The notes below the pieces were generated by a model. That model was not told the DNA's origin. It saw only the letters and a program-made list of their open reading frames with translations, and did no database searches. Positions 23,993 to 42,255 of a stretch of 64,000 nucleotides of DNA are shown in pieces (position 1 is the stretch's first letter; each line of letters starts with the position of its first letter). Where the stretch lies: NCBI GenBank assembly GCA_002269645.1, contig NIVC01000482.1, positions 248,001 to 312,000 on the forward strand. The letters are read 5' to 3'. This DNA is from Macrostomum lignano. Lineage: Eukaryota. Made by a program: the position numbers and the translations under genes.

Positions 23993-25309
23993 CATCCAGC
24001 ATCTGCCAGTGTCACTTGGTGCCCAGCCATCAATCAATTCTTGGTGTGGGACGCCAGTTCAGCGCAATGGCTGAGACAAGCCAGAGTCCTTGCTGTCCTT
24101 GTTGGCACATTGCCACGCTGTCCGCGTCAGAATCGGTGCCTTTACCTGCCCTGTGCGCTAACAGCCGAACAGGCAGCTGTTGCTGCTGAAGAATTGCAAT
24201 CTGACATTCGATTCAGCTGTCAGACTGCCTGTCCTGACCATCCGGCTGACTCCGCCACCATCGCTGAGTATGCCAGGCAGCGTGAACAGAATTACAGTGA
24301 AGCTACAGAAGTTCTGTTAGCCAGGCGTAGGCTGAGGATGACGCCTCACGCGGCTAAGATTGCGGCCGGTCGAGCTGTTAAAAGGCGTAGACAGGAGCAG
24401 AAAATGGAGCACCAAACTGGAAGTAACAAATTAAAAGAACAAAAAACTGAAGTTGAAGCAAAACAACAAACTGTTTCGAAAATGGAAGTTAAAGAAAGCC
24501 ATAAACTCTTGGAAACAAAACCGGAAGTTGAAGGAAACCAAATGCTTGGCGTGGAAGCGAAACCAGAAGTTGAAGGAAACCAAATGCTTGGCGTGGAAGC
24601 GAAACCAGAAGTTGAAGGAAACCAACTGCTAGGCGTGGAAGCAAAACCGGAAGTTGAAGAAAACCAAATGCTTGGCGTGGAAGCAAAACCGGAAGTTGAA
24701 GAAAACCAAACTGCTATTGAAGAACTGGAAGTTGATCTAGAAGCGGAAGCTTTAGCCGAAGGTCTTCCAACCTTAGACAGGGTTCCAATTCACCTGCCGA
24801 CTCGAACCCCGGACTCTTGGCTTCGAAGAGGCGAACTTCTGCCCCATGACTGCGGCGCTGCGCCATCATCGCCGCCAGAAACGGCGCGCAACCGGCTTCG
24901 CTTAAACGTTTGGCGCCAATTATGGCGCCTAGGCTACTATCTGACTAGCGGCGCCGCTAATTTCGGTGCCGATTTCCTGCTCTACCAGGGCGAGCCGTTG
25001 CGCTATCACGCCACGCATCTTGTCCTGTGCTGCCCGTCTGGCTCACTGCCTCCACCTCGGTCGCTCACCTGTCACCTGCGAGTGGCTAACGATGCAAAGA
25101 AATTGCTATTGATTGCCCTGCCAGTTGATAATGGCGCAGGCGTGGCATTTCGCGTGTTCGCCTGGCGCAGAGGCGAAGCCGTGGAGTTGGAGTTGGGCAG
25201 CGAGCAGGAGCGAGACGCTTTGGATGCCATGGAGGCGGCGGCTGCAGCTGCTGCAACTGACGGACGGCTGAATGAGATGGACTGCGATGATGAGGAAGAG
25301 GATCTTTGA
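23993..25309 (+). CDS. TSEN34: tRNA-splicing endonuclease subunit Sen34 (start codon not in this exon)
   Basis: N-terminal LVWD...LVGTLPRCPRQN...LPCAL and C-terminal FGADFLLYQGEPLRYHA...RVANDAKKLLL...AWRR match TSEN34; catalytic Tyr, His and Lys present. In-frame stop at 23969 and no ATG between it and the conserved N-terminal block. Confidence 0.9.
   Translation, partial: HPASASVTWCPAINQFLVWDASSAQWLRQARVLAVLVGTLPRCPRQNRCLYLPCALTAEQAAVAAEELQSDIRFSCQTACPDHPADSATIAEYARQREQNYSEATEVLLARRRLRMTPHAAKIAAGRAVKRRRQEQKMEHQTGSNKLKEQKTEVEAKQQTVSKMEVKESHKLLETKPEVEGNQMLGVEAKPEVEGNQMLGVEAKPEVEGNQLLGVEAKPEVEENQMLGVEAKPEVEENQTAIEELEVDLEAEALAEGLPTLDRVPIHLPTRTPDSWLRRGELLPHDCGAAPSSPPETARNRLRLNVWRQLWRLGYYLTSGAANFGADFLLYQGEPLRYHATHLVLCCPSGSLPPPRSLTCHLRVANDAKKLLLIALPVDNGAGVAFRVFAWRRGEAVELELGSEQERDALDAMEAAAAAAATDGRLNEMDCDDEEEDL
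24513..24720 (+). repeat. 42-bp coding minisatellite in TSEN34 (VEAKPEVEGNQMLG, about 5 copies)
   Basis: Visible in DNA and in the translation; frame-preserving. Confidence 0.9.
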
Positions 25310-25361
25310 GTTGGAGTTGCCTAAGATTTTTTGCCACTGTTCACTAATTATTTGATTTCTT

Positions 25362-26090
25362 CCTATCCGCTCTCTACCCAATGTTCTACTCATCTGATCC
25401 GCTCTCTACCCAATGTTCTACTCATCTGATCCCCTCTCTACCCAATGTTCTACTCATCTGATCCGCTCTCTACCCAGTGTTCTACTCATCTGATCCGCTC
25501 TCTACCCAATGTTCTACTCATCTGATCCGCTCTCTACCCAATGTTCTACTCATCTGATCCGCTCTCTACCCAATGTTCTACACATCTGATCCGCTCTCTA
25601 CCCAGTGTTCTACTCATCTGATCCGCTCTCTACCCAGTGTTCTACTCATCTGATCCGCTCTCTACCCAGTGTTCTACTCATCTGATTCGCTCTCTACCCT
25701 GTGTTCTACTCATCTGATCCACTCTCTACCCAATGTTCTACTCATCTGATCCGCTCTCTACCCAGTGTTCTACTCATCTGATCTGCTCTCTACCCAATGT
25801 TCTACTCATCCGATCCGGTCTCTACCCAGTGTTCTACTCATCTGATCCACTCTCTACCCTGTGTTCTACTCATCTGATCCGCTCTCTACCCTGTGTTCTA
25901 CTCATCTGATCCGCTCTCTACCCAATGTTCTACTCATCTGATCCGCTCTCTACCCAATGTTCTACTCATCCGATCCGGTCTCTACCAAGTGTTCTACTCA
26001 TCCGATCCGGTCTCTACCCAGTGTTCTACTCATCTGATCCACTGTCTACCCAGTTTTCTACTGATCTGATCCGCTCTCTACCCATTGTGA
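25362..26090 (+). repeat. 32-bp minisatellite (TGATCCGCTCTCTACCCAATGTTCTACTCATC)n
   Basis: Period 32 (25381, 25413); lies between TSEN34 and MBD2/3. Confidence 0.97.
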
Positions 26091-26421
26091 ACTTCGTAAA
26101 GTGCATTTATGATTAATGTTTTCTTGCTTGAGGACAGTGTCTGTCAAATCTTCATTGTTGGTCAAGTGTTGTAACACTCACTGCGAATGCAATACACTTG
26201 TCGCATTTTATAATTGGCCAAAAAATTTCCAGTATCTGTAATGAGCGATTGTTTTTACTTTATTTTGTTCTCTAACGGAAAGAATAAATAATGTTTTTCA
26301 TTACCTATTGTCAGCATTTTTGCTAACTTTAAAAAATTCTATCCCAATTTCTGTTTGGATAGAAAAAGTCTTTTTCCTTTGTCTCGAACAAAAGATCCAA
26401 AGATCAACTAAACCAGTTTCC

Positions 26422-28351
26422 ATGGCTACCAACCTCACTTCCGTTGTCGGCCTGCCGCCCGGCTGGAAGCGCGAGGAGTCGCTGAAGCAGTCCGGTTTGT
26501 CCTCGGGCAAGACCGAAGTCTATTATGTCAGCCCCGGCGGCAGGAAGCTGCGAAACCGGGTGGAACTGCAGCGAGCTCTGGGCGATCGATACGATCTCAG
26601 TAATTTCGACTGGCGCACAGGCAGGTTTCACCCCTATGCTAGGCCTCAGCAACACCAGCACCAGCATCATCACCAGCATCATCAACAGGCTTCGTTACAG
26701 TCGGCTGGTCGGATAAAGACTCCAGCCGACATGCTCTCGTCTGCTGCCGCCGCTGCTGCTGCTGCCGCGGCCGCCGCCGCTGCCACCACTTCGCAGGCAA
26801 CCAGTTCGCGATCTGGCGCAGGCGCCGGCTCTTCGGCCTCCAGCCGGGCAGTCACGGATCCGTCGTTGCGATTGCCGGTCAGACAGACCGCTTCTATGCT
26901 GAGGCAGTCGGTGAGTGGCTTTTGCAGCTGATTGCTTTATGGCTATGAGATATGTTGCTTGTAGAAATTGCAAATGCTGACTCAAATTCTGACCAACTGC
27001 TGACCTACATGCTGACCTACATGCTGACCTACATGCTGACTTAAATGCTGACCCAAATGCTGACCTACATGCTGACACAAATGCTGACTCAAGTGCTGAC
27101 CTACTGCTGACCCAAATGCTGACCCAAATTCTGACTCAAGTGCTGACCTACAAGCTGACTCAAATGCTGACCCACTGCTGACCTACATGCTGACCCAAAT
27201 GCTGACTCAAATGCTGACCCAAATGCTGACTCAAATGCTGACCCAAATGCTGACTCAAATGCTGATCCAAATGCTGACTCAAATGCTGACCCAAATGCTG
27301 ACTCAAATGCTGACCCAAATGCTGAATCAAATGCTGACCTACATGCTGTCCTACACGCTGACCCAAATGTTGACTCAAATGCTGACCCACTGCTGACCTA
27401 CATGCTGACACAAATGCTGACTCAAGTGCTGATCTACATGCTGACCCAAATGCTGACCTACACGCTGACCCAAATGCTGACTCAAATGCTGACCCACTGC
27501 TGACCTACATGCTGACCAAATGCTGACTCAAATGCTGACTCAAATGCTGACCTACATGCTGACCCACATGCTGACCCATGAACTGATCCCTTATGCCTGA
27601 CCCATGAACTGATCCCTTATGCCTGACCCATGAACTGATCCCATATGCCTGACCCATGAACTGATCCCATATGCCTGACCCATGAACTGATCCCATATGC
27701 CTGACCCATGAACTGATCCATATGCCTGACCCATGAACTGATCCCATATGCCTGACCCATGAACTGATCCCATATGCCTGACCCATGAACTGATCCCATA
27801 TGCCTGACCCATGAACTGATCCCATATGCCTGACCCATGAACTGATCCCATATGCCTGACCCACATGCTGACTCACGCACCCGCAGGTGGAGCTGGTCCG
27901 CGGCCACCCAGACAGCCGGCGCAACGATCTGCAGCACGGGCCCAAAGACCGGCCCCGCCAGCTATTCTATCACAAGCGATTCGACAATCTGCGCGCCTGC
28001 GACCCGGACACTGGCGAGCCCAGTCCGGAGATTGGCCTGCCGAAGCACCTGCAACCGGCCGGTGGCGGCCCGGTCACCGGCACCGACCAGCTGGTGCTCA
28101 GCGTTGCCGACTGTCTCAGCAGTGTCGGCGGTGGCCACTCCGGCGCTGTAGCCGTTGTCGGCCAGCAGAACTGCAAAGCATTCGAAAAGAATCCGCACGT
28201 GTCCGTGAACCCGGACCAGCCGCTGGTTCGCTATCATCTGGTGTCTGACGACGAGGTCCGCCAGCAGGAGGCCGTGGTGCGCGAGGCTCGTCGAAGGCTG
28301 GCCTTGGCCCTGCGGCTGTTCAAAGCTGGCAGGGAGGCTTCGGCAGCTTAA
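26422..28351 (+). CDS. MBD2: Methyl-CpG-binding domain protein MBD2/3, about 317 aa (exons 26422-26910, 27887-28351)
   Basis: MBD (LPPGWKREE...VYYVSPGGRKLR), LPVRQTASM, PRQLFYHKR, EKNPHVSVNPDQPL and the coiled coil VSDDEVRQQEAVVREARRRLA match MBD2/3; phase-0 GT-AG intron. Confidence 0.92.
26985..27870 (+). repeat. Intronic minisatellites: 12-bp (CAAATGCTGACY)n, then 26-bp (CCCATATGCCTGACCCATGAACTGAT)n
   Basis: Fill most of the MBD2/3 intron and run up to the acceptor. Confidence 0.95.
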
Positions 28352-28375
28352 TGGACTCGCTTTGTTCTCGTATTG

Positions 28376-28628
28376 GTTGCTAAGCAACGGGTTAGTTTGC
28401 TTAGCAACGGGTTAGTTTGCTTAGCAACGGGTTAGTTTGCTTAGCAACGGGTTAGTTTGCTTAGCAACGGGTTAGTTTGCTTAGCAACGGGTTAGTTTGC
28501 TTAGCAACGGGTTAGTTTGCTTAGCAACGGGTTAGTTTGCTTAGCACCGTGTTGGTTTGCTTAGCAACGGGTTAGTTTGCTTAGCAACGGGTTAGTTTGC
28601 TTAGCAACGGGTTGGTTTGCTTAGCAAC
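28376..28628 (+). repeat. 20-bp tandem repeat (TTAGCAACGGGTTAGTTTGC)n
   Basis: About 12 near-identical copies starting ~25 bp after the MBD2/3 stop codon. Confidence 0.97.
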
Positions 28629-29389
28629 GATTATGCTTAGTTTGCATGGCAAATAGAGATGTTATTTAGGAACTGTAGAAGTGCAAAATCCATTCTTGTA
28701 CCAGCTTTATCTGTCTGGCTCTCTAGCCTACCAGCATCCTTCATCCCGTCTTATGCCCTCAGTTATGTTTTTTTGCGTCTGTCTGTCCTGTGTCCCATTA
28801 GCAAGTTTTTGTGTAAATAATTTTGTCATTTGGGGTTTCACTTATAAATGCTGCTTGTACATGTACCGTAATGTGCGAAGCTAATACCGACATCAAGTTA
28901 ATGTTAATTGTCTATTATTGTTGTATGTCTATTAAAAGTACAAAATTAATCTGCCCTTATCCGCTATGGAGCTGATTATTCCCTAAGCTGTTGCTTATAA
29001 ACAAAAATTTCGTTAGCAAATTAATCTGTAATATATTACTTATATAAGTAGCTATGTTTGCTTCCCAGTGAATTTAATACGCCGTTTGCTTATGGTTCAT
29101 TCAGAATTGGCAATTATAAGGTCATAATTTTATGCTGACTTTTTTGTTTAAACTAACAATGTTAATAAAACTGTGTAAGTTATCGCGCTAGCTGTTCCCG
29201 CGAAAATGAAATTATAATTCTGAATTCTGAATGAATGGCGTTTCGTGTTGTTCTTTATTTATGCTTGGTATATATGATCTAGTCAGTTAGAACTGTATGC
29301 TCAGGTTGATTGCTTGTGGTGGATTTTTAAAAAAAATATGGGGAGTATTCTTAAACATACTCTTAGCTCAAGAGTCTACACTGTCTAAT

Positions 29390-30790
29390 CTTCATCTGAG
29401 CCCTTCCCTCACCTTCTCTCTTATCTTGCTCTCCCTCCCTTCCCCTCTCCGTCTCCCTCTCTCCCCGCTCCGTCTCCTCCCCCGCTGTCTCCCTCCCCCC
29501 GCTGTCTCCCTCTCCCCGCTGTCTCCCTCTCCCCGCTGTCTCCCTCCCCCCGCTGTCTCCCTCTCCCCGCTGTCTCCCTCTCCCCGCTGTCTCCCTCTCC
29601 CCCTCTCCGTCTCCTTCTCCCGCTCCGTCTCCCTCCCCCCGCTGTCTCCCTCCCCCCGCTGTCTCCCTCTCCCCGCTGTCTCCCTCTCCCCGCTGTCTCC
29701 CTCCCCCCGCTGTCTCCCTCTCCCCGCTGTCTCCCTCTCCCCGCTGTCTCCCTCTCTCCCGCTGTCTCCCTCTCCCGCTGTCTCCCTCTCCCCGCTGTCT
29801 CCTCCCCCCGCTGTCTCCCTCCCCCCGCTGTCTCCCTCCCCCCGCTGTCTCCCTCCCCCCTCTCCGTCTCCTTCTCCCCGCTCCGTCTCCCTCCCCCCGC
29901 TGTCTCCCTCTCCCCGCTGTCTCCCTCCCCCGCTGTCTCCCTCTCCCCGCTGTCTCCCTCCCCCCGCTGTCTCCCTCCCCCCGCTGTCTCCCTCCCCCCG
30001 CTGTCTCCCTCCCCCCTCTCCGTCTCCTTCTCCCCGCTCCGTCTCCCTCCCCCCGCTGTCTCCCTCTCCCCGCTGTCTCCCTCCCCCGCTGTCTCCCTCT
30101 CCCCGCTGTCTCCCTCTCCCCACTGTCTCCCTCCCCCCGCTGTCTCCCTCCCCCGCTGTCTCCCTCCCCCCTCTCCGTCTCCTTCTCCCCGCTCCGTCTC
30201 CCTCCCCCCGCTGTCTCCCTCCCCCGCTGTCTCCCTCCCCCGCTGTCTCCCTTCCCCCTCTCCGTCTCCCTCCCCCCGCTGTCTCCCTCCCCCCGCTGTC
30301 TCCCTCCCCCCGCTGTCTCCCTCCCCCCGCTGTCTCCCTCCCCCCTCTCCGTCTCCTTCTCCCCGCTCCGTCTCCCTCCCCCCCTGTCTCCCTCTCCCCG
30401 CTGTCTCCCTCCCCCCGCTGTCTCCCTCTCCCCGCTGTCTCCCTCTCCCCGCTGTCTCCCTCCCCCTCTCCGTCTCCCTCCCCCGCTGTCTCCCTCCCCC
30501 CGCTGTCTCCCTCCCCCCTCTCCGTCTCCTTCTCCCCGCTCCGTCTCCCTCCCCCGCTGTCTCCCTCCCCCCGCTGTCTCCCTCCCCCTCTCCGTCTCCC
30601 TCCCCCCGCTGTCTCCCTCCCCCCGCTGTCTCCCCTCCCTCCATCTCCCTCCCCCTCCCACCCTCCGTCTACCTCACCCTCCTCCCTCTCCCACTCCCCG
30701 CGCCGTCTCCTCTCTTCCCTTTTCTCCCTTTTCTCCCTCTCCTTCCCTCCTTCTCTCCCTTTCTCCCCGTCTAACCCTTTCTCTCTTTCC
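29390..30790 (+). repeat. CT-rich minisatellite / low-complexity tract (CCCCCGCTGTCTCCCT-like units)
   Basis: Directly visible; source of the 512-aa and 432-aa spurious ORFs. Confidence 0.96.
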
Positions 30791-30997
30791 CTCTGCCAAG
30801 ATCAATCGAGCAAGCAAAAAACTTTCTTTTCTTAAAAACTTCTTGACGTCTCCAGTATGTGCGCATAAAAAAGTTGCCATGCACCTGCATGATAGGAAGT
30901 TGATTTACAAGCTGACAATTTATGGTGCTATAGAGGGGAACTGAGAGGTACAATACAATACAAGCTAAACCTGTTATTTTCCCGCACCTGGTGACCC

Positions 30998-33498
30998 ATG
31001 CCTGACTACCGGTTCTCCATGGACCAGGTGATCCCAGGCCTGTGGCTTGGCGGTCGCAACGCGGCCAAGAATGCTCAAGTGCTCCGATCCAGACGGGTCA
31101 GCCGCGTTCTAACAGTGGACGATTTGAACCTGCCAGACCGTCTGTTGGAGCAGTTTGACGATGGAGCGCATCGGTTTGTTCGGCTTGAGGATCACGCCAG
31201 GGAGAACCTGCTGGACCGGCTGCAGGAGTGCCTGCAGTTTATTGGCGAAGCCTTGGAAGGCGGGCACAATGTACTGGTGCACTGGTGCGCGCACTCTGCT
31301 GGCTCTGGACGGGAAAAGCTGGGGGGGGGGTTGCTGGGAAAATCGCACAAAATATCCAGCTGCTGAGTTCGCTAGCTGGATGATGCTGATATGCTGATGG
31401 GTTGTCTAGGAGGGTGTGATTAAACCCAGGGGCGTCGCCACCGGAGGGGGACAGAGGGGCATGTCCCACCCAGTAAAAGCTATGGGGGGGACATGCCAAT
31501 GCTTTGTCCCCCCCACCCCCACCTTGTTGACCCGTTACGTTATGGAAATCAATAATTTTGCTTCAGGGCGACAAAACATAACGCCTGCAGCACCAAAATG
31601 AGTGCCTGCAGCACCAAAATGAGTGCCTGCAGCGCCAAAATGAGTGCCTGCAGCACCAAAATGAGTGCCTGCAGCGCCAAAATGAGTGCCTGCAGCACTA
31701 AAATGTGTGTCTGCGGCGCTAAAATGGGGCCTGCGGCGCTAAAATGAGTGCCTGCAGCACTAAAATGAGTGCCTGCAGCACCAAAATGAGTGCCTGCAGC
31801 ACCAAAATGAGTGCCTGCAGCGCTAAAATGAGTGCCTGCAGCACTAAAATGAGTGCCTGCAGCACCAAAATGAGTGCCTGCAGCACCAAAATGAGTGCCT
31901 GCAGCGCCAAAATGAGTGCCTGCGGCGCCAAAATGAGTGCCTGCAGCAACAAAATGAGTGCCTGGGGCGCCAAAATGAGTGCCTGCAGCGCCAAAATGAG
32001 TGCCTGCAGCAACAAAATGAGTGCCTGCGGCGCCAAAATGAGTGCCTGCGGCGCCAAAATGATTGATGACAACACCGATTCGAAAATAATGTACATGTAG
32101 GAATTTAGTCATGTACATGTAGAATACTGTCCCCCCACCATAAAATCCATGGCGACGCCCCTGATGAAACCTTTAATTCCTAATAGTACGATTTCTTGCA
32201 AATAGTTGCGTTGGAGTAAAGATATTCTATTAGTAACATCCTTTTAGGACTAAAAGTACACTAAACATACATAGATAGGGACAACTGCAAGTTTTTCAAA
32301 ACCTTGTCACTAAACCATCTATTGATCAAGCAAAAGCTTGGAAGATACTCGTAAGGGGGAGTTCTAAAGTGATGAAACCTTAGCGTAGAGGAGATAATGC
32401 TAATGTAGAGAGGAATGTACAGATTTATTCGGCTAGCATGACAGCAGCTCTGGCTCTCGTGCCACAACCTCCTGAGTGGCCTGCAATTATTTTTATTAGC
32501 TAGTGTACATCGTCTAATAACGATGTCGACATTGTCTCCCAACCTCGCGTACACACGCTCACACAGGGTCCATCATGTGTGAGAATCGCACGACAAATCT
32601 TCCCCAAGGGCTACTCAAGTAGAAGCTTGACGGGAAACCTCGTTTCCAGGGAAAATTGTAGAAGGCAGGTTTCCGAAAAAATACACTACCGAGATGGCTT
32701 AGCTCATTGGTTTTATAAATCAATTTTGTCATTCTTAGCTGACTGTGTAACAATATGTGTATCAGAGATGATGAAATAGATTCATAAAACCAAAGTCGAG
32801 CTGTGCCATGCATTGTTATGATTATCAATAGAGCTGTAAGAAAGGCACAACATATCAAAAGACGAACATATTGGGTCTGCATGCCTCCTATCGAAAGCAA
32901 TAACAGTTTTTGTGCTGAAAAAATGAAAACCTCCTATCTCGGTAGTGTATTTTTTTGGAAAAGTCTGCCTTTTACAATTTTCCAGGAAACGAGGTTTCCC
33001 TTAAGCTTCTACTTAAGTAGTCCTTGTGGTGTCCTTGCAAATCCGCTAGCCTATTTTCGTATTTCGAGACCAAGGGCCTCGGAGCGAGAGTCGGAAGTGC
33101 TTGCCGCTGAGCTGACCAATCAATCAATCTCAACCATTCCAGTCGGGTGGGCGTCTCTCGCAGCGCATCCGTTGTCATCGCTTACCTGATGCAGAGTCAG
33201 CAGCTGGCCTTTCAATCGGCTTATGATTTGGTCAAAGCAGGCCGGCCTGTCATTGGGTGAGTCTGGCCGTGTTAGCTTTGCTCAGATTTCATCAGACCAA
33301 CCTGTTTCAAAATTCCTTCTCTGCAGACCAAACGACGGTTTTGTAGAACAGCTGCGTCTGTTTGAGCAGATGGGCTGTCAAGTTGACAAAGACCACGCCG
33401 GCTACAAAGAGTTAGTAGAGCGGCTGAAAGAGGAGACTGCAATTTTGGAGAATTCCAAACTACCTGCTCCATCGCCTCGCCAGGGTGACTTAAGTTAG
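30998..33498 (+). CDS. DUSP12: Dual-specificity phosphatase, DUSP12/YVH1-like catalytic domain (exons 30998-31284, 33143-33256, 33327-33498)
   Basis: Splicing rebuilds the active site VLVHC-RVGVSRSASVVIAYLM and GPNDGFVEQLRLFEQMGCQVD...YK; both introns are phase 2; 190 aa if it stops at 33498. Confidence 0.85.
31427..32163. mobile_element. hAT-like MITE family A, copy 2, with internal 21-bp array
   Basis: Perfect 14-bp TIR CAGGGGCGTCGCCA / TGGCGACGCCCCTG; 8-bp TSD ATTAAACC/ATGAAACC; (AAAATGAGTGCCTGCAGCACC)n at about 31581-32060. Confidence 0.9.
32605..33026. mobile_element. hAT-like MITE family B, copy 2
   Basis: About 90-bp imperfect TIRs starting CAAGG(G/A)CTAC; no matching TSD found. Confidence 0.8.
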
Positions 33499-33725
33499 TG
33501 ACTCAAGTGACTCAAAAAAGATTTTCATTTTTTTTATAAAACTGCAATATGATTTCTGTGCTATTTTTTGTTTTTCACGAGTATAAATACATGTACATAT
33601 ATTGTCTGTTGATATCTAAGGGAGCGGTACACCTCCACAGGTAAGGAGGCAATTAAAGTTTAATTGTCACTTATTTTCAGAGTCACTTGATTTTCCGACC
33701 GTGCATTGCTTTTTATCTGCAGGTA

Positions 33726-34090
33726 CTTATTTTTTATTAGAGGCAGGGGGGTTGTGTGCACCCTGGCGCACTTTAAGCGACATAGGCACACATCCGGCGA
33801 GAGGCATTACTGCCCATTCCGCCGACTCCCCTGAGCAGGCATACAAGCTCGCGGATACGTACGCAGGCACACACTCACACAGGAGTGTACAGCGGCCCTA
33901 ACTTTATTTTATCGTTAGGCATGTACACTTCACTGCGCCTTGGGGGGTTGGCTCTCAAGGCCGTTAATTGCACGAGCAGAGCCAAGCCGAGATTCCAATT
34001 CAGCCCCAAATTAATGTGACTGCACTTGGAATTGAGCCTGGGTCGCTGGCACACCAGAGCAGCTGCGCTACCGCTGGGCTACGGCCCCCC
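33726..34090 (-). mobile_element. tRNA-derived SINE
   Basis: Minus-strand head GGGGCCGTAGCCCAGCGG (A box) ...GGCTCAATTCC (B-box-like); A-rich tail with AATAAA; 10-bp TSD TCTGCAGGTA (33716-33725, 34091-34100). Body resembles 47700-47820. Confidence 0.8.
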
Positions 34091-34260
34091 TCTGCAGGTA
34101 TTTACTTGATGGATGAAGTTTCTATCATTCAAAAATAAATTTCCAAGAAAATACAGTTACATTCATTTTGCTAGCAGAACAGTATCTCAAAGGGTGAAAT
34201 GAGTTAATTTAAATCAGGATTATTTTCTTTCAATTTATTATTTTCTTAAATTTATTTTAG

Positions 34261-35056
34261 AGGTCGTGAAAAGCATGGATTATGATCAAATGCTACACGC
34301 CCTTAGGCGTTTTGTTGCTCGAAGAGGGATACCATCTGTAGTCAGTGACAACGCACGCACCTTTCGAGCCGGAGCTAAATTAATTGGTGCGCAAATTTCC
34401 GAAGCCTTGCAGGCGTTTTGTTCATCAAGGAAAATCAGCTGGCATTTCATTCCTGAGCGAGCCCCGTGGTGGGGAGGTTTCTGGGAGAGGCTCATTGGAT
34501 TAGTGAAGATGTCACTTAAGAAAGCAGCAAAACGTCAACTCCTAGACTTTGATCAGTTAGTGACTCTGGTGCTTGAGACCGAAGCAGTGGTGAACTGTCG
34601 GCCGCTGCTGTATGTGTCATCTGATGACAGCACCGAGGTGATCACACCGTCGCACTTTATTGCAGCGGGACGACTCACTCAAGAATCTGGCGGGGTTGAG
34701 AATGATGGTGAGTCGTTGCTGCCACTTCCAAGAAGATTATAAAGATGCTCATAGCTGCGCTAGACTGGTTTTGGCACCAGTGGAAAACAGCCTATCTTCA
34801 GGCGCTTCGTGAAAAGGCTTTGAAGGACCATCCTGAAAGTCGTGTACCACGTGTTGGTGAAATGGTTCTGCTCGTCGGGGAAGTCCACCAGCCGAGGCTG
34901 AGGTGGAGGCTTGGGTTGGTTGAAGAGATTCGCGTTGGCCGTGACGGTGCAGTCCGTTCGGCGGTCGTCCGAGTGTCGGGTGCTGGGAATTCCCGGCGCT
35001 GGGAGCGGGTGGGGAGACCAGTTCAAGCTTTGGTGCCGCTAGAGATTCAGTCTTAA
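34261..35056 (+). pseudogene. BEL/Pao LTR-retrotransposon integrase C-terminal fragment (core plus DUF5641-like tail)
   Basis: ALRRFVARRG..SDNA, WHFIPERAPWWGGFWERLI, EAVVNCRPL, ITPSHF, FWHQWKTAYL, WRLGLVEEIRVGRDGAVRSAVV, RPVQALVPLE; frameshift near 34740; 5' truncated. Confidence 0.92.
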
Positions 35057-35400
35057 GTCTCGTTTTTTTGCGCTTGGCTTCGGCTACTGAATTTTCAAAT
35101 TTCGTCGTTATATCGATAGTCTGTTTGGTTGATTTGGCTGGTTATGTTAAATTGCGTTGTTTTTTTCTGCGTTTGCGTTTAGCGTTTTTTTGAGATTTGC
35201 AATTCTCATCATTTTCCGGTAATTGGGTTTATTTTCCTTGAGAATCGTTCGTTTGGGTTATTGTTAAATTTGATTAATTTCACTCAATGTATCTTATTAC
35301 AATTGATTTCTACCATTATAACATCGAATATATTGTTAAAATTTGTGTTAATATTCGAAGGTTAATTTTCTGATAAAAATGCTTCCCATTTTTGGAGAAG

Positions 35401-37650
35401 TGTCGCGTTCTTTGGTGCATGCATGCTAGTGATGAGGACGCACTTTTTTCCAAATCCCGCGCTAGCACATGGGCTCTAAACTTACTAGCCTACTGACAGC
35501 AGGCTAAGGGCATTTTTATTCTTTTTCTGCGAATTGTCATAGAATCTATACTAGATATAATGTCTGGTCATAATAGTAGTCATAATAACATAGGCGCAGC
35601 TTTTTGGGTCATAAATCATCGCTTTCGAAGCTGGTCTGACAGCCACCTGCGCCTCACTCAGTGTTGAGGCGGGCGCCAGATGGTTTGAGAGGATGCGGGC
35701 GGTAGCTTTTTTCTCATCATTTTTGACAGGCCATCAAGATTTATGAGGTCAGAGCCTATTGTTCGTGTTCACTCAAGCGTGTGACAGCTTTGACAGCTAT
35801 GCGTTTTACCCCTAAAAGTACCTTGGGATTAGCGATTAGTGATTTCTCTTCATTATCTTCACTTTCTATTTAATAAGAGCTTTCTAATGTATGTTTTTTC
35901 ATTAATTTCTGTCAATCCTACGCGAAAAGTCATAAATCATTTTGTTGCGATTTTGATTGATTTATGGCCGCACCTGTCATCTTTTTACGACCCTGTGGGA
36001 ACTGATAGGATCTCCCGGTCACGTGATTCTGGGTAGCAACAAACTTAGCCAATCAGAAAATTCGGCGCTCATTTTAACAAAACGGCTCAGCCAATCAGAA
36101 TCGACGTGTTCCATTATAACAAACTGTGGTCCAGTTGGCGGCTATTTAAGCCGGTTTTTTTGGCCCGCTCGGACCACAACCGGCTCTCCCGCGGAGGAAC
36201 CTTCCCGACATTTCTGGTTCCCGGAGCCCGACCGTCGTTTCTTGATCCCCGGATTGCGACTTCCCCCTCATCATCAAGGACGAGTCCCCCGGTCATCAGC
36301 AGCGAACATCAAAGTTAAGATCATCACCTGCTAGCTATCTGCGAAGACTGTGACAGCATCATCCCGAGTCTACAGCTGCGAAGCATCAAGCCGATTCGGG
36401 CACTGTGGATTGCCTGGTCCTCCGGCTGTTAAGTTTCTGATTGGTTGGGTGAGAGGCTGCCTAGACTTGCTTGATTGGGTGATTCCTTATCTGTCCCCTG
36501 TTTCAGTAGCTGGATTAGGCGCACACTTTTGCTCATTTTGTTCAGTAGTGCTGTTGCTGAGGCAGAGGTCATTCAATAATACTGCTAGTAGTCTAAAACT
36601 CCAATTCAATCTGAAGTGTGAAGTGATCTGAGGAGAAGGTTAAATCTGACAGTTATTTTTATCAGTTTTATTTCTTTGTTCGCCGATGGCTCAGATGAGT
36701 AGCAAAGCTAGTAGGCGCCGGTCACAGTGGACCAATGGCAAGGCAGTTCTCAGTCGATCAATCTATCAAATCAGTTAGCGAAACTGCCAGAAGTGCAGAA
36801 TTGGCGCCAGAGATGTACTTTGTGCACTCTAGGTTAGCCAAGCAGCTCGGGTAATGAATCATGCGGTCTCTGAAGTTTGAGTTAGTCTATCATCAGCGCT
36901 ATGAGAGGCTAGTTGGCGCGTTGAAGGCCAAAAGTACATATCTTCGTATTTAGCAATGTAATAGTACATGTAGCTACCCCATAATCTCGCCACTGCAAGA
37001 ATCCCCTGCACAAGTCCCCTCTGTACCTGCATGGCCAGTGCGATCTAGTCCCAGCAGTGTCCCTTAACATCGGCTATGACTTCGAGATTGACAGCAAAAA
37101 GACACTAGTTGGCAGGTAAGTGCGAAGCCCCCTCTAGTCGGAAGCCCGATTTCGAGAGTCCCGGTGTGGTGAGCCAGGACGTACGGGCTGGTTGCAGCGA
37201 GTTAGTTGATCTGCGGATTAGCTAATTTCTACTTTCAAAATTCTCCCTGCTCGTCTCTCGCTGTCCCTCTCTTAGCTATAGGACCTAGACTGCTCGCCAC
37301 ACGATCAAGCTACCATGGGGCTGACCATCTGACAGGAGTGGGGGGCCAGGACTCTAATGGATTCATTTCTGAGACCTGAGGCCCGAAGGCTTCCCCACAA
37401 GGGGGCCGGAAGGTCGAAACCCATCACTAGTGGAGTGGTTAAATCTATTATCGATTTTATTACAAGCCTATCACTACCAAGCCTATCAAGCCTATTACAA
37501 GCCTATCACAGAATCGGCAGAATCGCCTCAGAAGCGCTGCTTGTTGGACGATATCGCCCAAATCTGCTTGCCCAAATATCGTAGATTCGCAGCACGCAAC
37601 AGACCAGGACGCGACTCTTCGAGAATTATAAATTATTGTTTACACAACTG
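35401..37650 (+). mobile_element. Candidate 3' LTR of the BEL/Pao element (right end uncertain)
   Basis: Purine tract GGAGAAG directly followed by TGT at 35401, downstream of the integrase stop. The right boundary is a guess at a TTTACACA near 37645. Confidence 0.3.
36015..36150 (+). promoter_or_regulatory. Pol II promoter-like cluster
   Basis: E-box GTCACGTGA, two GCCAATCAG CCAAT boxes and TATA-like CTATTTAAG in the usual order. Confidence 0.45.
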
Positions 37651-37749
37651 CCTTGAGAATTCCTGAATTTCACCATTAAGCCAACCGCCATGTCCCCAAA
37701 TAGGAAATTCTACAATTTAATAGGTGAACTCTTTCCTGCATCCAAACAA

Positions 37750-38710
37750 GAAATCTCCCCACAAATCCCGATACAGGTAGAAATCTCCCCCCCCACAAAT
37801 CCCGACACAAGTAGAAATCTCCCCCACAAATCCCGACACAAGTAGAAATCTCCCCCACAAATCCCGACACAGATAGAAATCTCCCCAAAAATCCCGACAC
37901 AGGTAGAATCTCCCCCCACAAATCCCGACACAGGTAGAAATCTCTCCCACAAATCCCGACACAGGTAGAAATCTCTCCCACAAATCCCGACACAGGTAGA
38001 AATCTCTCCCAGAAATCCCGATACAGGTAGAAATCTCTCCCACAAATCCCGATACAGGTAGAATCTTCCCCATCCCACAAATCCCGATGCAGGTAGAAAT
38101 CTCTCCCACAAATCCCGACACAGGTAGAAATCTCTCCCACAAATCCCGACACAGGTAGAAATCTCCCCCCCCACAAATCCCGATACAGGTAGAAATCTCT
38201 CCCACAAATCCCGATACAGGTAGAATCTTCCCCCCACAAATCCCGATACAGGTAGAAATCTCTCCCACAAATCCCGACACAGGTAGAAATCTCTCCCACA
38301 AATCCCGACACAGGTAGAAATCTCCCCCCCCTCACAAATCCCGATACAGGTAGAAATCTCTCCCACAAATCCCGATACAGGTAGAATCTTCCCCATCCCA
38401 CAAATCCCGATACAGGTAGAAATCTCTCCCACAAATCCCGACACAGGTAGAAATCTCTCCCAGAAATCCCGACACAGGTAGAAATCTCTCCCACAAGTCC
38501 CGACACAAGTAAAAATCTCCCCCCCCCCACAAATCCCGACACAGGTAGAATCTCCCCCCCACAAATCCCGACACAGGTAGAAATCTCCCCCACAAGTCCC
38601 GACACAGGTAGAAATCTCCCTCCCACAAATCCCGATACAGGTAGAAATCTCTCCCACAAATCCCGACACAGGTAGAAATCTCTGCCACAAATCCCGACAC
38701 AGGTAGAAAT
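37750..38710 (+). repeat. ~31-bp minisatellite (CCCACAAATCCCGACACAGGTAGAAATCTCT)n
   Basis: Directly visible. Confidence 0.97.
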
Positions 38711-39152
38711 GCCAGCAGTTCAAGTTTATCTTTCCTTTAATCATGAAATGCAAATGTTTTTTTCAGACGCCAACTTTACTATCAATTTATATTCTGAGCT
38801 CGATGGGTCAGTGTTGTGGTCATTCACAAATGACATTCAAAAAATTCAGCAAAGCAGACCTAGAATTAGTGAGCTTTTTATGCACGAGAGGAGTTCAGCC
38901 ATAACCCAAGACATCAATGGCAATAACAATCCGAAAAATTTCTATGTATTGTGTTGCTTTGTTGTAAAAATAAAATTTGTAAAAATTTCGATTTTGGTAG
39001 CTCGTAGAACAAACTTGCCTATAGTTCTGGCCATAGACGGCAGGACGGGGCTCGAGTGCCTGCTCGAGTCGAATTGCATCCGCGATGTTTTTCCTTAAAC
39101 CAGCTCAAAAATATTCATAGCCGCATCAGCCATACGATCAAGTTGTCCAACA

Positions 39153-41385
39153 ATGTCCATCGATCAGTTTCAATGCCCTACTAATGAGAATGTGAGCAAT
39201 ACGACTCTGCGAACCCTTGGTGACAGCGTCCTGTTCGACGAGATCATGCTGAGGGAACTGGAGGCTAAGCAGCAGCTCGAAAGCCAGTCTGTTGAGTCTG
39301 AGCAGCTGCGCAACGTCGAAATCGAGGCGGCGGCTTCGAGGGTTCTGGCTCTGATCATGGACAGCTCGTTCAAGCGAAAATATGGACAGGACTTTGCCTA
39401 CCCAAAGTCCATCCACTGCTACCTGTTCACGCAGCAGCCGCGCAATCATACCTACGCTTTTGAGGCCTTTGCTGCGGTTGCCACGGTCACACCGAATGCG
39501 TTGAAGCGTAAAAAAGAGGAGATGATCTTTCATCCCATGTTTGAGAATGTTATCGAACGGTATACCAATTCACGAGCTAAGCCAAATCCCGTGCTCATGG
39601 AGACTCGAAACAGCGAATTCTGCTACCGGCTGTCCATCCTGGTTGAGGCTGTGCCCATCAGTGTTCAGGTGACTTCGGGCTCTCCATTCGTTTTAGAATT
39701 TCTACCTTTAAAAAAGCTTTTTGCGACAGCTACTGCACTCCATTTTCGAGATAGTTCTAGAACCGACTATACTCAAGTCAAGACGTTTTTAGAACAGACC
39801 AGTCCATCAAGACCTTTTTAGAACAGACCAGTCCACCACGATGTTTTTACAACAGACCCGTCCATCAAGACGTTTTTAGAACAAACCAGTCCATCAAGAC
39901 GTTTTTACGAGTAGAACAGACCACTCCATCAAGAGGTTTTTAAACCTGCGAGGTACCATTCCATTATCAAGACGGTTTTATAGTCGTCAACTCCTATTGA
40001 AAAGCTTTCACACTATAATCACATTTAAATCAGTTGAAACTAAATTACGGCTCGTACATAAAGTATTTACTTAACCACACTAATTACGTTAGTCTGATAA
40101 ATGCACTCTGATATTCCAACACCCGCATTCCCAGGCGTCTTTGGGATTCGGCATGTCTAGCCTGCGACTAATTCGCCAATACGAGATCCTTTACTACATC
40201 TGGGAGACGTTCCGCCACGATCTCGAGGTCAAGAAGTGCTATTCAGACCAGCTAATCGGCATCCCCATGCCGTTCGAGTTTGTCAACGTGTGCGGCAACG
40301 AGTACGACTTCGAATTCTCCGAGCACTCCATCAACTACTACGACATCCGGGGCGCCTACGTGCCAGTCAACAGCTCCAGGATACCCGGCGCCGGCAAGGG
40401 CAAACCGCTGGGCTCGTTTCTCAGCTACATGTCCATGGAGAAGCTGGGGCCCAGTCTGGCCTACATGGCCGACTTGTTAAAATCGCAAAGGAAATGGTTT
40501 AAAATGTCTACTGCGCTGAAACTGTTGGACCAAATCCTGTGCAGGCTGATGGTGCTGCACAGGTATGGCATCATCCTGGGCAACCTGGACTTTCGATACC
40601 TGAACTTTGGTGTACGCGAGGCCATCAATGTGCTCTACGTCAGCAGTTTTGATTGCGCCGTTCAGGCGCCGACAACGCAACGACCGTTGAACTATTTCAA
40701 CGAGCGCTTCGCCTCGATTGGCGCATTGAAAGGAGTGGCGCATTTTGTCAATGACATTGAGACGGCTTTCTATCTGTTTCTGGCCATGCTGTCGCACCGG
40801 CTGCCCTGGGACCAGAAACTCCCAGTCAGCGAGACGCCGCTGACTGACCAGCAGACGCAGCAGCTTCAGCAGCCGCAATTCGACGGCTCCTGGGAAGTCG
40901 GCGGCAACACCAGGTATCAATCGACTCTTAGGACGCACCTAGACGAGAGGACCAAGCTGTGGGACACCACCAGCTGGATAGACCGCATGCTGAACTCGTA
41001 CACGCTCAGGAACCAGATGAAATCGCCAGCTCTTGAAGGCTTCGCTTTCGACATCATCCAAATGGTGTACCAGAAAACCAAGGAGGCCATCAGTTGCGCG
41101 TCGATTCCGCAGCAAGACTTCATGACCAATGTCATGACGCCGTCCACGACGGCAAACAACGCTTACATGGGCATTAGAAAGGTCATCGTGTCCTTCTTCC
41201 GTTTCGAAAGTCTCAGCAACAACCTTCGAGATGCCACCTGCCAGAACAAGGTGGACCAGCTGTTGGCCACTGAGGAGTCCGACGGCAGAGCACTGTGGGA
41301 CCTGAACAACTGGTGCTGGAATGTGTTCGAGACTTCATTCATGAGCAATGCTCGATCTTCAAGACGCAGCATCGTCAAGTTTTGA
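39153..41385 (+). CDS. Casein kinase 1-family pseudokinase, about 588 aa (exons 39153-39668, 40135-41385)
   Basis: CK1-like segments MSMEKLGPSL, ALKLLDQILCRLMVLH, RFASI, NDIETAFY, RLPW; phase-0 GT-AG intron; catalytic motifs degenerate. Confidence 0.75.
39779..39945 (+). repeat. 29-bp intronic tandem repeat (AAGACGTTTTTAGAACAGACCAGTCCATC)n
   Basis: Period 29, about 5 degenerate copies. Confidence 0.85.
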
Positions 41386-41843
41386 TAATGGAATCGCTTG
41401 GAAGTCTTTTACTGCCTCTGAGATGGACGAGTAATGTATATTCATACTTTCTGGTAGACTGTACCGTTGTTAAAGATAATAACGTACCAACGTACTGTAA
41501 ATACGTCAGCACAACTTCTGCAGATTGTCTTGAGAGTACAATTCAATGTGTCAATTTTTCATTGTCAGCAATTCGCTGATTGAGGAAGCAACGAACAACA
41601 ACGGTTCATGTTCGCTTTCCTTTTTAAACTTGTTTTCATACTCTGTATCCGCGTCTGTGTCTAGTGGTACCCGCACATATAAGCTCGGTTTTGTGCTCGC
41701 ATTGATTTTTTTAAATAAAGAAAATCAGCGTTATAACGTAAAATATAAATACGAAAATAACTACGTCGACTAAAACACCTGCATACTGGACTCGCGGATA
41801 GCGAAAAAAAAGAAGTTAATCCATTTTCTCTTTTTTTATTTAA

Positions 41844-41866
41844 TGCCTACCCTGTCTGCCTGTCTC

Positions 41867-41929
<63 letters not shown>

Positions 41930-41932
41930 GAC

Positions 41933-41963
<31 letters not shown>

Positions 41964-41964
41964 G

Positions 41965-42043
<79 letters not shown>

Positions 42044-42085
42044 ATGTCTGTCTGTCTTTCTCTCTCTCTGTCTGTCTGTCTGTCT
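41844..42085 (+). repeat. (TCTG)n microsatellite
   Basis: Directly visible. Confidence 0.98.
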
Positions 42086-42255
42086 TGTGTCCAACACTGG
42101 GCTTGGACAGAGTGATGTCTATGGCCAAAATGCTCCACTTTCGCTGCAGCAATGAGGAACAAATTAAGCATGACGTGAGTCGAGAGCATCTTGTGCAGTT
42201 GCCTGTGATGGACTACAGGAAATCAAAGTCAAATCTATTTATTTTTATACTATAG

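What the first reader, a model, noticed from the sequence alone, without database searches (positions are those of the whole stretch)
30998..34742. DUSP12-like phosphatase lacks its zinc-binding domain and can splice in frame into a BEL/Pao integrase core
Seen: no CxxC-rich DUSP12 C-terminal exon is visible before the next gene. Exon 3 has a phase-1 donor candidate G|GTGACT at 33484/33485, the same hexamer as the inferred pseudokinase donor. The integrase fragment begins exactly after a T-rich TTTTAG acceptor (34260). Joining them gives G+AG = Glu, restoring the E of the usual HLE motif, then VVKSMDY...; the product is a 346-aa phosphatase-integrase chimera ending at 34742. An optional 42-nt phase-1/1 mini-exon (33681-33722) keeps the frame. 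The chimera would hold the second Asp (SDN) and the Glu (WER) but not the first Asp of the DDE triad. Inference: possible exonisation replacing the native nucleic-acid or ribosome-binding domain. The simpler alternative is a truncated 190-aa phosphatase next to a dead element.
Basis: inference. Interest (0 to 1): 0.7.

Follow-up and report, generated by a model that had tools for sequence, protein, structure and literature searches.

The report
Short DUSP12 phosphatase beside dead retrotransposon
A flatworm (Macrostomum lignano) DUSP12-type phosphatase gene really does lack the usual zinc-binding tail, but the "integrase" it could splice into is a decaying retrotransposon scrap whose reading frame is broken in the gene's two sister copies, so the proposed fusion protein is most likely a coincidence.

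Summary
The window is Macrostomum lignano (Mlig_3_7, NIVC01000482.1). A three-exon DUSP12-like gene runs 30998/31019 to 33498 and is GenBank Mlig010338.g2. A GGTGACT donor-like site sits at 33484/85 and a TTTTAG at 34260. Joining them gives an in-frame 346-aa product. No zinc-domain exon exists anywhere in the 64 kb.

The exonisation reading is not supported.
- The "integrase" is a 5'-truncated BEL/Pao pol relic (34257-35056), already present before this locus was triplicated.
- In both sister copies a 2-bp insertion ends the same hypothetical fusion 41 codons after the junction.
- Further deletions of 10, 13 and 139 bp break the frame in those copies.
- In the window itself, the stop at 34740-42 is created by a 2-bp insertion.
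- The DUSP coding sequence has no indels, and dN/dS is about 0.2-0.3, against 0.6-0.9 for the relic.
- Frame compatibility is the 1-in-3 chance value.
- All four database models end at the TAG.

What remains mildly interesting is a conserved DUSP12 orthologue without the zinc domain. Whether a zinc-domain gene exists elsewhere in this genome could not be determined.

The parts
30998..31284 (+). DUSP12-like exon 1. The ATG at 30998 is not conserved in paralogue g1, so the probable start is Met8 at 31019. The exon ends inside the catalytic Cys codon (TG|T, phase 2).
   Evidence: the same intron position and phase occur in rhinoceros DUSP12
31285..33142 (+). Intron 1 (1858 nt), filled with repeats: a TIR-flanked element carrying a 21-nt tandem array, and a foldback element.
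33143..33256 (+). DUSP12-like exon 2, encoding the rest of the active-site loop (C)RVGVSRS.
33327..33498 (+). DUSP12-like exon 3, the terminal coding exon. It carries the DUSP12-specific MGCQVDKDHAGYKEL linker and ends ...PRQGDLS-TAG.
   Evidence: all four database models end here
33485..33512 (+). Micro-repeat with three copies of GTGACT at 33485, 33498 and 33507.
33681..33722 (+). It is in frame in the window, but a 4-bp insertion in paralogue g3 shifts it. Its 'donor' lies in the target-site duplication of the neighbouring insertion.
33726..34091 (-). Insertion of about 366 nt flanked by the 9-bp direct repeat CTGCAGGTA (33717-25 and 34092-100). Its head resembles tRNA box A and box B, and its tail is A-rich, so it is probably a tRNA-derived SINE. 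It is present in all three paralogues.
   Evidence: ARAGORN and Rfam were negative, so the classification is inference
34255..34260 (+). TTTTAG acceptor-like hexamer. Its last four bases belong to the retained pol codons TTA-GAG.
34257..34742 (+). BEL/Pao pol relic, the C-terminal half of the integrase core. It aligns to residues 1485-1633 of a 1754-aa BEL/Pao polyprotein. The second Asp and the Glu are present; the first Asp and the H2C2 finger are missing.
34738..34739 (+). Window-specific 2-bp (TA) insertion. It frameshifts the relic and creates the TAA at 34740-42 that ends the hypothetical chimera.
34745..35056 (+). BEL/Pao pol relic, the C-terminal DUF5641 region, in a different frame from the integrase part in this copy.
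   Evidence: (PF18701, E 3.6e-14)

Best explanation
Two unrelated things lie side by side.

(1) Mlig010338.g2 is one of three paralogous copies of a Macrostomum lignano DUSP12/Yvh1-family phosphatase gene. It consists only of the catalytic domain plus a short linker (183-190 aa) and terminates at TAG 33496-98. It appears to be a functional, selectively maintained stand-alone phosphatase.

(2) A dead, 5'-truncated, roughly 0.8-kb remnant of a BEL/Pao LTR-retrotransposon pol gene lies 0.76 kb downstream on the same strand. It covers the last part of the integrase core plus DUF5641. It was already there, already truncated, and already separated from the gene by a SINE-like insertion, before the locus was multiplied by the recent genome duplication of M. 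lignano. It has since decayed neutrally and independently in each copy.

The in-frame donor/acceptor pair is a one-in-three coincidence. The long open frame in this copy is simply the copy that has so far taken only one frameshift.

Shown: gene structure, family assignments, absence of a zinc-domain exon, presence of the relic in three copies, and the frame-breaking indels.
Inferred: that the phosphatase is functional, that no chimeric mRNA of significance is made, and the order of events.
For: Identity of the locus:
- The window is 100% identical to NIVC01000482.1.
- The gene is PAA82275.1, Mlig010338g2, with paralogues g1 and g3 in syntenic loci.

DUSP12 assignment:
- The best PDB hit is the DUSP12 catalytic domain, with the alignment running into the DUSP12/Yvh1-specific linker.
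- The protein aligns to mammalian DUSP12 residues 27-196 of 340.
- Intron 1 splits the catalytic Cys codon at the same base and phase as in rhinoceros DUSP12. Intron 2 is also at the homologous position and phase.

No zinc domain.

BEL/Pao assignment:
- The closest full-length relatives (1734-1804 aa) carry Peptidase_A17, DUF1759, RVT_1, Integrase_H2C2 and DUF5641.
- 34257-35062 is the only pol homology in the 64 kb.

Decay of the relic:
- g1 and g3 share a +2 bp insertion after 34351. g1 also has -13 and -139 bp deletions, g3 has -10 bp, and the window has +2 bp creating its stop.
- The same splice in g1 or g3 would add only 41 residues.
- The DUSP coding sequence has zero indels across all three copies, with omega 0.19-0.32, against 0.6-0.9 for the relic.

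Chance level of the join: frame compatibility is 19/55.

Gene models: all four database models, three from GenBank (built from RNA-seq-guided transcripts) and one UniProt entry, end at ...GDLS.

Genome duplication in M. lignano: PMC10468722.
Against: No RNA-seq could be examined.

The GenBank annotation was deliberately filtered to remove transcripts overlapping repeats (PMC5730564). A chimeric isoform would therefore have been discarded, and its absence from the databases is only weak evidence.

The donor-like and acceptor-like sites are conserved in all three copies, although almost everything around them is as well.

Substitution counts are small (2-13 per partition), so the dN/dS contrast alone is not significant. 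The argument rests on the indels.

Small indels could in principle be assembly errors. The 10-, 13- and 139-bp deletions, and the 2-bp insertion shared by two independent contigs, are unlikely to be.
Confidence: 0.85

Rival explanations
1. Exonisation. In this copy (g2) an alternative isoform splices 33484 to 34261, optionally through 33681-33722. It would make a 346-aa phosphatase fused to an integrase-core remnant that substitutes for the lost zinc domain.
For: The join is in frame and open for 160 codons. The GT and AG dinucleotides and a T-rich tract are present and conserved in all three copies. The annotation pipeline would have discarded such an isoform, so its absence from the databases is uninformative.
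Against: In g1 and g3 the same splice stops after 41 codons, and further frameshifts follow. The stop that ends the chimera is itself a frameshift artefact in the relic. The donor is weak: C at +5, G at -2, and part of a threefold GTGACT micro-repeat. Frame compatibility is at chance level. The fragment lacks the first catalytic Asp and the H2C2 finger. Candidate poly(A) signals, ATTAAA at 33652 and AATAAA at 34134, lie before the acceptor. No chimeric protein exists in a collection of about 15 billion proteins.
Confidence: 0.04
2. The gene is not really truncated. Its zinc-domain exon lies outside the window or on another contig and is joined by long-range cis- or trans-splicing from the 33484 donor.
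For: The donor-like site is phase 1, the same phase as intron 3 of vertebrate DUSP12, which lies in the same linker. The stop comes only four codons after it, as expected for read-through of a former donor.
Against: No zinc-domain similarity was found in the 30 kb downstream, in the rest of the window, or in the 10-kb flanks of both paralogues. Other same-strand genes intervene at 39153-41385 and from 42297. All database models stop at the TAG. Relative to the conserved YK motif, the vertebrate intron maps about 13 residues upstream of this site.
Confidence: 0.04
3. The short DUSP is itself a non-functional truncated remnant, a pseudogene in waiting, while a separate complete DUSP12 elsewhere in the genome does the work.
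For: The zinc domain is the part needed for the conserved ribosome-stalk role of Yvh1/DUSP12, and the phosphatase domain is dispensable in yeast (PMC2753163). The gene models are flagged partial, and the first ATG is lost in g1.
Against: All three copies keep an intact ORF, intact splice sites and an intact HCxxGxxR motif with no indels, while DNA 0.8 kb away accumulated many. Omega is about 0.2-0.3. The gene models come from RNA-seq-guided transcripts, so the gene is expressed. No second M. lignano DUSP12-like protein surfaced in the homology search, but that search has limited sensitivity.
Confidence: 0.07

Closest known systems
DUSP12 / hYVH1 (human) and Yvh1 (yeast), atypical dual-specificity phosphatases
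   Same: DSPc fold with the HCxxGxxR(S) active site. The DUSP12-specific post-catalytic linker motif (MG..VD....YK) is present. It is the best match among solved structures and database proteins. Introns 1 and 2 are at the same positions and phases as in a mammalian DUSP12.
   Different: It lacks the whole C-terminal Cys-rich zinc-binding domain, about 130 aa. In yeast that domain binds the 60S subunit and is necessary for Mrt4 release, whereas the phosphatase domain is dispensable (PMC2753163).
BEL/Pao (Belpaoviridae) LTR retrotransposons; the flatworm example Sinbad of Schistosoma mansoni is cited from memory
   Same: The 34257-35056 segment is 50-60% identical to the integrase-core C-terminal half plus DUF5641 of 1.7-1.8-kaa polyproteins that carry the Pao peptidase A17, DUF1759, RT and the H2C2 finger.
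   Different: Only about 15% of pol remains. There is no gag, protease, RT, H2C2 finger or first catalytic Asp, and no LTRs were detected. The relic is frameshifted in every copy.
Host-gene/transposase fusion genes created by exonisation, such as SETMAR (SET domain plus mariner transposase) (from memory)
   Same: The geometry is similar: a host gene followed on the same strand by a transposable-element coding remnant, with GT and AG sites that would join them in frame.
   Different: True cases show an ORF preserved across copies or species, purifying selection and junction transcripts. Here the TE-derived ORF is broken in two of three copies, and no junction evidence exists.

Membership tests
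DUSP12/Yvh1 subfamily | Dual-specificity phosphatase catalytic domain with the HCxxGxxR motif | tested here: met
   PF00782 DSPc, E 3.4e-27; VHCRVGVSRS in the translation
DUSP12/Yvh1 subfamily | Closest similarity to DUSP12 rather than other DUSPs, extending into the post-catalytic linker | tested here: met
   PDB: DUSP12 4jnb is the top hit and, like Yvh1 6n8m_Y and 5m43, aligns through residue about 163, whereas the other DUSPs end at 148. The top non-self database hits are named DUSP12. The protein aligns to residues 27-196 of a 340-aa DUSP12. The margin over DUSP19 in the PDB is small.
DUSP12/Yvh1 subfamily | Shared intron positions with bona fide DUSP12 genes | tested here: met
   Intron 1 splits the catalytic Cys codon TG|T in phase 2 in both the flatworm and the rhinoceros gene. 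Intron 2 is phase 2, immediately before xN(D/E)GF, in both. Only one outgroup gene was examined in detail.
DUSP12/Yvh1 subfamily | C-terminal Cys-rich zinc-binding domain | tested here: not met
   No tblastn or motif match in the 64-kb window or in the paralogous loci. All protein models end at GDLS.
DUSP12/Yvh1 subfamily | Binds the pre-60S subunit and releases Mrt4 | not testable with these tools
   Functional assay needed. From yeast data it is expected to fail without the zinc domain.
BEL/Pao LTR retrotransposon | pol homologous to polyproteins carrying the Pao peptidase (A17), RT and integrase | tested here: met
   Relatives P0150, P0155 and P0160 carry PF05380, PF03564, PF00078, PF17921 and PF18701. 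The fragment aligns to their last roughly 270 residues and hits DUF5641 above threshold.
BEL/Pao LTR retrotransposon | Complete element: LTRs, gag, protease, RT/RNase H and a full DDE integrase in an open frame | tested here: not met
   Only 34257-35062 is homologous. There are no long direct repeats in 33400-37700. The first Asp is absent, and every copy has frameshifts.
Exonised / domesticated TE coding sequence | Reading frame preserved in paralogous or orthologous copies | tested here: not met
   +2, -10, -13 and -139 bp indels in g1 and g3, and +2 bp in the window. The hypothetical fusion stops after 41 codons in g1 and g3.
Exonised / domesticated TE coding sequence | Purifying selection on the TE-derived part | tested here: inconclusive
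   Omega is 0.6-0.9 for the relic against 0.19-0.32 for the DUSP, but it rests on very few substitutions.
Exonised / domesticated TE coding sequence | Transcripts spanning the host-TE junction | not testable with these tools
   No RNA-seq access. The databases hold no chimeric protein, but the GenBank annotation excluded repeat-overlapping transcripts.

The most novel reading that the evidence does not exclude
Macrostomum lignano may have no zinc-domain-bearing DUSP12 at all, or may encode that domain as a separate gene. In that case the phosphatase half of DUSP12/Yvh1, which is dispensable for ribosome-stalk assembly in yeast, would be maintained on its own under purifying selection in three copies. 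That would be a natural separation-of-function experiment, pointing to an independent role for the conserved phosphatase domain whose role is still unknown. The loss may have been caused by the same deletion that truncated the neighbouring BEL/Pao element.
Probability: 0.2. Interest if true: 0.5.

Novelty: new variant of a known kind. Interest (0 to 1): 0.2.

Why it matters
As an exonisation candidate it does not matter, because the evidence points to a dead retrotransposon fragment and a coincidental frame match.

The residual value is modest. This DUSP12 orthologue has lost the domain that carries the family's only firmly established function, 60S binding and Mrt4 release. It is nevertheless kept intact in three paralogues. 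It could therefore help show what the conserved but so far substrate-less phosphatase domain does by itself.

The locus is also a clean example of using the recent genome duplication of M. lignano as a built-in test of coding constraint.

Tried and rejected
(1) Search for a second, complete DUSP12 or a stand-alone zinc domain in M. lignano. Two database searches used zinc-domain profiles. The first returned no flatworm hit among 137 candidates. The second returned 737 hits, but only the best 120, mostly vertebrate, were listed.

(2) Transcript evidence through exact-protein look-ups. The integrase ORF (155 aa) is on no contig in the collection.

(3) Classification of the 366-nt insert as a tRNA-derived SINE. 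ARAGORN and Rfam found nothing, and there are no other copies in the window. The call rests only on the 9-bp target-site duplication, the box A/B-like motifs and the A-rich tail.

(4) LTRs or other parts of the BEL/Pao element. None were found.

(5) The idea that G|GTGACT is the relic of the ancestral intron-3 donor, with GDLS* as a read-through tail. The phase matches vertebrate intron 3. However, the position is about 13 residues off in a poorly alignable linker, and the hexamer is part of a threefold micro-repeat. I kept it only as speculation.

(6) A literature search for the gene identifier found nothing.

(7) Pfam has no model for the DUSP12 zinc domain, so the domain's absence had to be tested by tblastn.
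Full report
ORIGIN OF THE WINDOW

Window 21004-43498 is 100% identical to Macrostomum lignano assembly Mlig_3_7, contig NIVC01000482.1:269004-291498. The gene in the finding is GenBank PAA82275.1, 'hypothetical protein BOX15_Mlig010338g2, partial'.

Two further copies, g1 and g3, lie on other contigs (loci L002 and L003). They have the same neighbours: a TSEN34-like gene, a 339-aa gene, the DUSP, then (called in L001 and L003) a 588/702-aa gene and a 197-aa gene. M. lignano is a hidden polyploid with a recent whole-genome duplication (PMC10468722). These are therefore paralogous or homeologous copies that diverged 1-5% at the nucleotide level.

CHECKING THE OBSERVATION

The exon structure is 30998-31284, 33143-33256 and 33327-33498. 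It gives a 190-aa protein with an intact VHCRVGVSRS active site and a TAG at 33496-98.

G|GTGACT at 33484/85 is a phase-1 GT. TTTTAG ends at 34260. The join is in frame and open for 160 codons to TAA 34740-42, giving 346 aa. The 42-nt mini-exon also keeps the frame.

Three details need correction.
- Similarity to BEL/Pao polyproteins starts at 34257. The AG of the 'acceptor' is part of the retained codons TTA-GAG (L-E of the HLE motif), and the Glu is already encoded genomically.
- The ATG at 30998 is CAG in g1, and every database model starts downstream of it. Met8 (31019), which aligns with Met27 (the start of the aligned region) of a mammalian DUSP12, is the likelier start.
- The donor hexamer is the first of three GTGACT copies in a 28-nt micro-repeat.

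None of the splice arithmetic exceeds chance. 19 of 55 GT/AG combinations are frame-compatible. GTGACT occurs 17 times on this strand against about 15.6 expected, and TTTTAG occurs 28 times.

THE PHOSPHATASE

Pfam gives DSPc (E 3.4e-27). Among solved structures the human DUSP12 catalytic domain is the best hit. Only the DUSP12/Yvh1-type chains align past the catalytic domain into MGCQVDKDHAGYKEL. The best non-self database hits are named DUSP12. The protein aligns to residues 27-196 of a 340-aa mammalian DUSP12.

Intron 1 splits the catalytic Cys codon (TG|T, phase 2) exactly as in the rhinoceros gene. Intron 2 is also at the homologous position and phase. I therefore treat it as a DUSP12 orthologue or very close relative.

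The zinc-binding domain is absent. That probe, the Yvh1 segment and 15 diverse database zinc domains gave no tblastn hit in the zinc-domain part of the queries with E below about 0.2, in the 64-kb window or in L002 and L003. Motif scans were empty. The only significant hits were to exon 3 itself, from the linker parts of the queries. All four protein models, three from GenBank and one from UniProt, end at ...PRQGDLS.

THE 'INTEGRASE'

The 160-aa segment has more than 13,000 homologues. The best full-length ones (1734-1804 aa, 50-59% identity) carry Peptidase_A17 (Pao peptidase), DUF1759, RVT_1, Integrase_H2C2 and DUF5641. They are BEL/Pao polyproteins, and the fragment aligns to their last roughly 270 residues. 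Pfam finds DUF5641 above threshold at 34745-35056 and a sub-threshold rve match.

No other pol homology exists in the window, and no LTR-like direct repeats flank the fragment. It is a 5'-truncated relic lacking the H2C2 finger and the first catalytic Asp.

Between the gene and the relic lies a 366-nt insertion with a 9-bp target-site duplication and SINE-like features. The donor of the 'mini-exon' sits in that duplication.

THE DECISIVE COMPARISON

The relic, its truncation point and the SINE-like insert are present in all three paralogous loci. They therefore predate the duplication. Since then the relic has changed as follows.
- g1 and g3 share a 2-bp insertion after 34351.
- g1 has additional 13-bp and 139-bp deletions.
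- g3 has a 10-bp deletion, plus a 17-bp deletion in the T-rich tract before the AG.
- The window copy has a 2-bp TA insertion at 34738-39. This separates the integrase frame from the DUF5641 frame and creates the very stop codon that ends the proposed chimera.

None of these indels is a multiple of three. Applying the same splice to g1 and g3 gives only 41 residues after the junction. The mini-exon is frameshifted by a 4-bp insertion in g3.

In contrast, the 573-nt DUSP coding sequence has no indel in any copy. Nei-Gojobori omega is 0.19-0.32, against 0.6-0.9 for the relic, though the counts are small. This is the signature of a maintained gene next to neutrally decaying DNA.

TRANSCRIPT EVIDENCE AND ITS LIMITS

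The GenBank models derive from an RNA-seq-guided transcriptome with experimentally supported boundaries. The models show that mRNAs reading through 33484 to the TAG exist, but they cannot exclude a minor chimeric isoform.

No protein joining the two parts exists in the searched collection. The integrase ORF is on no other contig. Candidate poly(A) signals lie at 33652 and 34134, upstream of the acceptor. That last point is inference only.

MECHANISM AND HISTORY (INFERRED)

The ancestral Macrostomum DUSP12 lost its zinc-domain exons before the genome duplication. One deletion with breakpoints downstream of exon 3 and inside a neighbouring same-strand BEL/Pao element would explain both the missing exons and the 5' truncation of the element. 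This cannot be tested here.

The phase-1 GT at 33484 might be the old intron-3 donor, since vertebrate intron 3 is also phase 1 in this linker. The positions differ by about 13 residues, however, so this remains speculation.

In yeast the zinc domain is what binds the 60S subunit and releases Mrt4, and the phosphatase domain is dispensable (PMC2753163). The flatworm protein is thus unlikely to perform that role and presumably acts as a stand-alone phosphatase.

Whether a zinc-domain protein exists elsewhere in the genome could not be determined. The two profile searches were uninformative for this species.

VERDICT

The sequence features are real, and the 'lacks its zinc domain' part is supported. 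The exonisation hypothesis is not supported. Interest is low. The only point worth following up is the conserved zinc-less DUSP12.

Noticed in passing
window 29435-30710: A 1.3-kb C/T-rich minisatellite (17/34-nt unit CTCCCTCCCCCCGCTGT, about 73 copies) lies directly upstream of the DUSP start. It generates spurious ORFs of 400-500 aa on both strands.
   Followed up: partly
window 31427-32163 (intron 1): An element bounded by perfect 14-nt terminal inverted repeats (CAGGGGCGTCGCCA / TGGCGACGCCCCTG). It encloses a 21-nt tandem array of about 23 copies (31583-32062) and looks like a non-autonomous DNA transposon.
   Followed up: partly
window 32602-33029 (intron 1): A foldback or MITE-like structure. 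Several overlapping inverted-repeat segments form arms of about 95 nt around a 240-nt core. An indel difference between the paralogues lies near 32695.
   Followed up: no
window 33717-34100: A 366-nt insertion with the 9-bp target-site duplication CTGCAGGTA. On the minus strand it has a tRNA-like box A/B head and an A-rich tail, and it is shared by all three paralogues. ARAGORN and Rfam do not recognise it.
   Followed up: yes
The GenBank and UniProt models are 5'-partial and start at different residues (P2, D3, R5). Met8 at 31019 is the probable initiation codon.
   Followed up: partly
window 31284/33143 and 33256/33327 vs L004 (rhinoceros DUSP12): The positions and phases of introns 1 and 2 are identical between the flatworm gene and a mammalian DUSP12, including the split catalytic Cys codon TG|T. 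This is an ancient conserved gene structure.
   Followed up: yes
window 37749-38710: A 31-nt minisatellite of about 30 copies lies between the relic and the next gene. It is present with different copy numbers in all three paralogous loci and produces long spurious ORFs.
   Followed up: no
window 34812-37657 (vs L002) and 35238-37477 (vs L003): About 2.2-2.8 kb downstream of the relic has no blastn counterpart at the homologous position in the two paralogues (285 unmatched bases lie there in L003). This is a large indel or replacement of unknown content, with no Pfam-scale ORFs or repeats noticed.
   Followed up: no
window 24029-43498: A same-strand gene series is seen in the paralogous loci: a TSEN34-like tRNA-splicing endonuclease subunit at 24029-25309, a 339-aa gene at 26356-28351 and the DUSP in all three, then a 588-aa gene at 39153-41385 and a 197-aa gene from 42297 (called in L001 and L003, not in L002). 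The 339-, 588- and 197-aa products have no Pfam hit.
   Followed up: no
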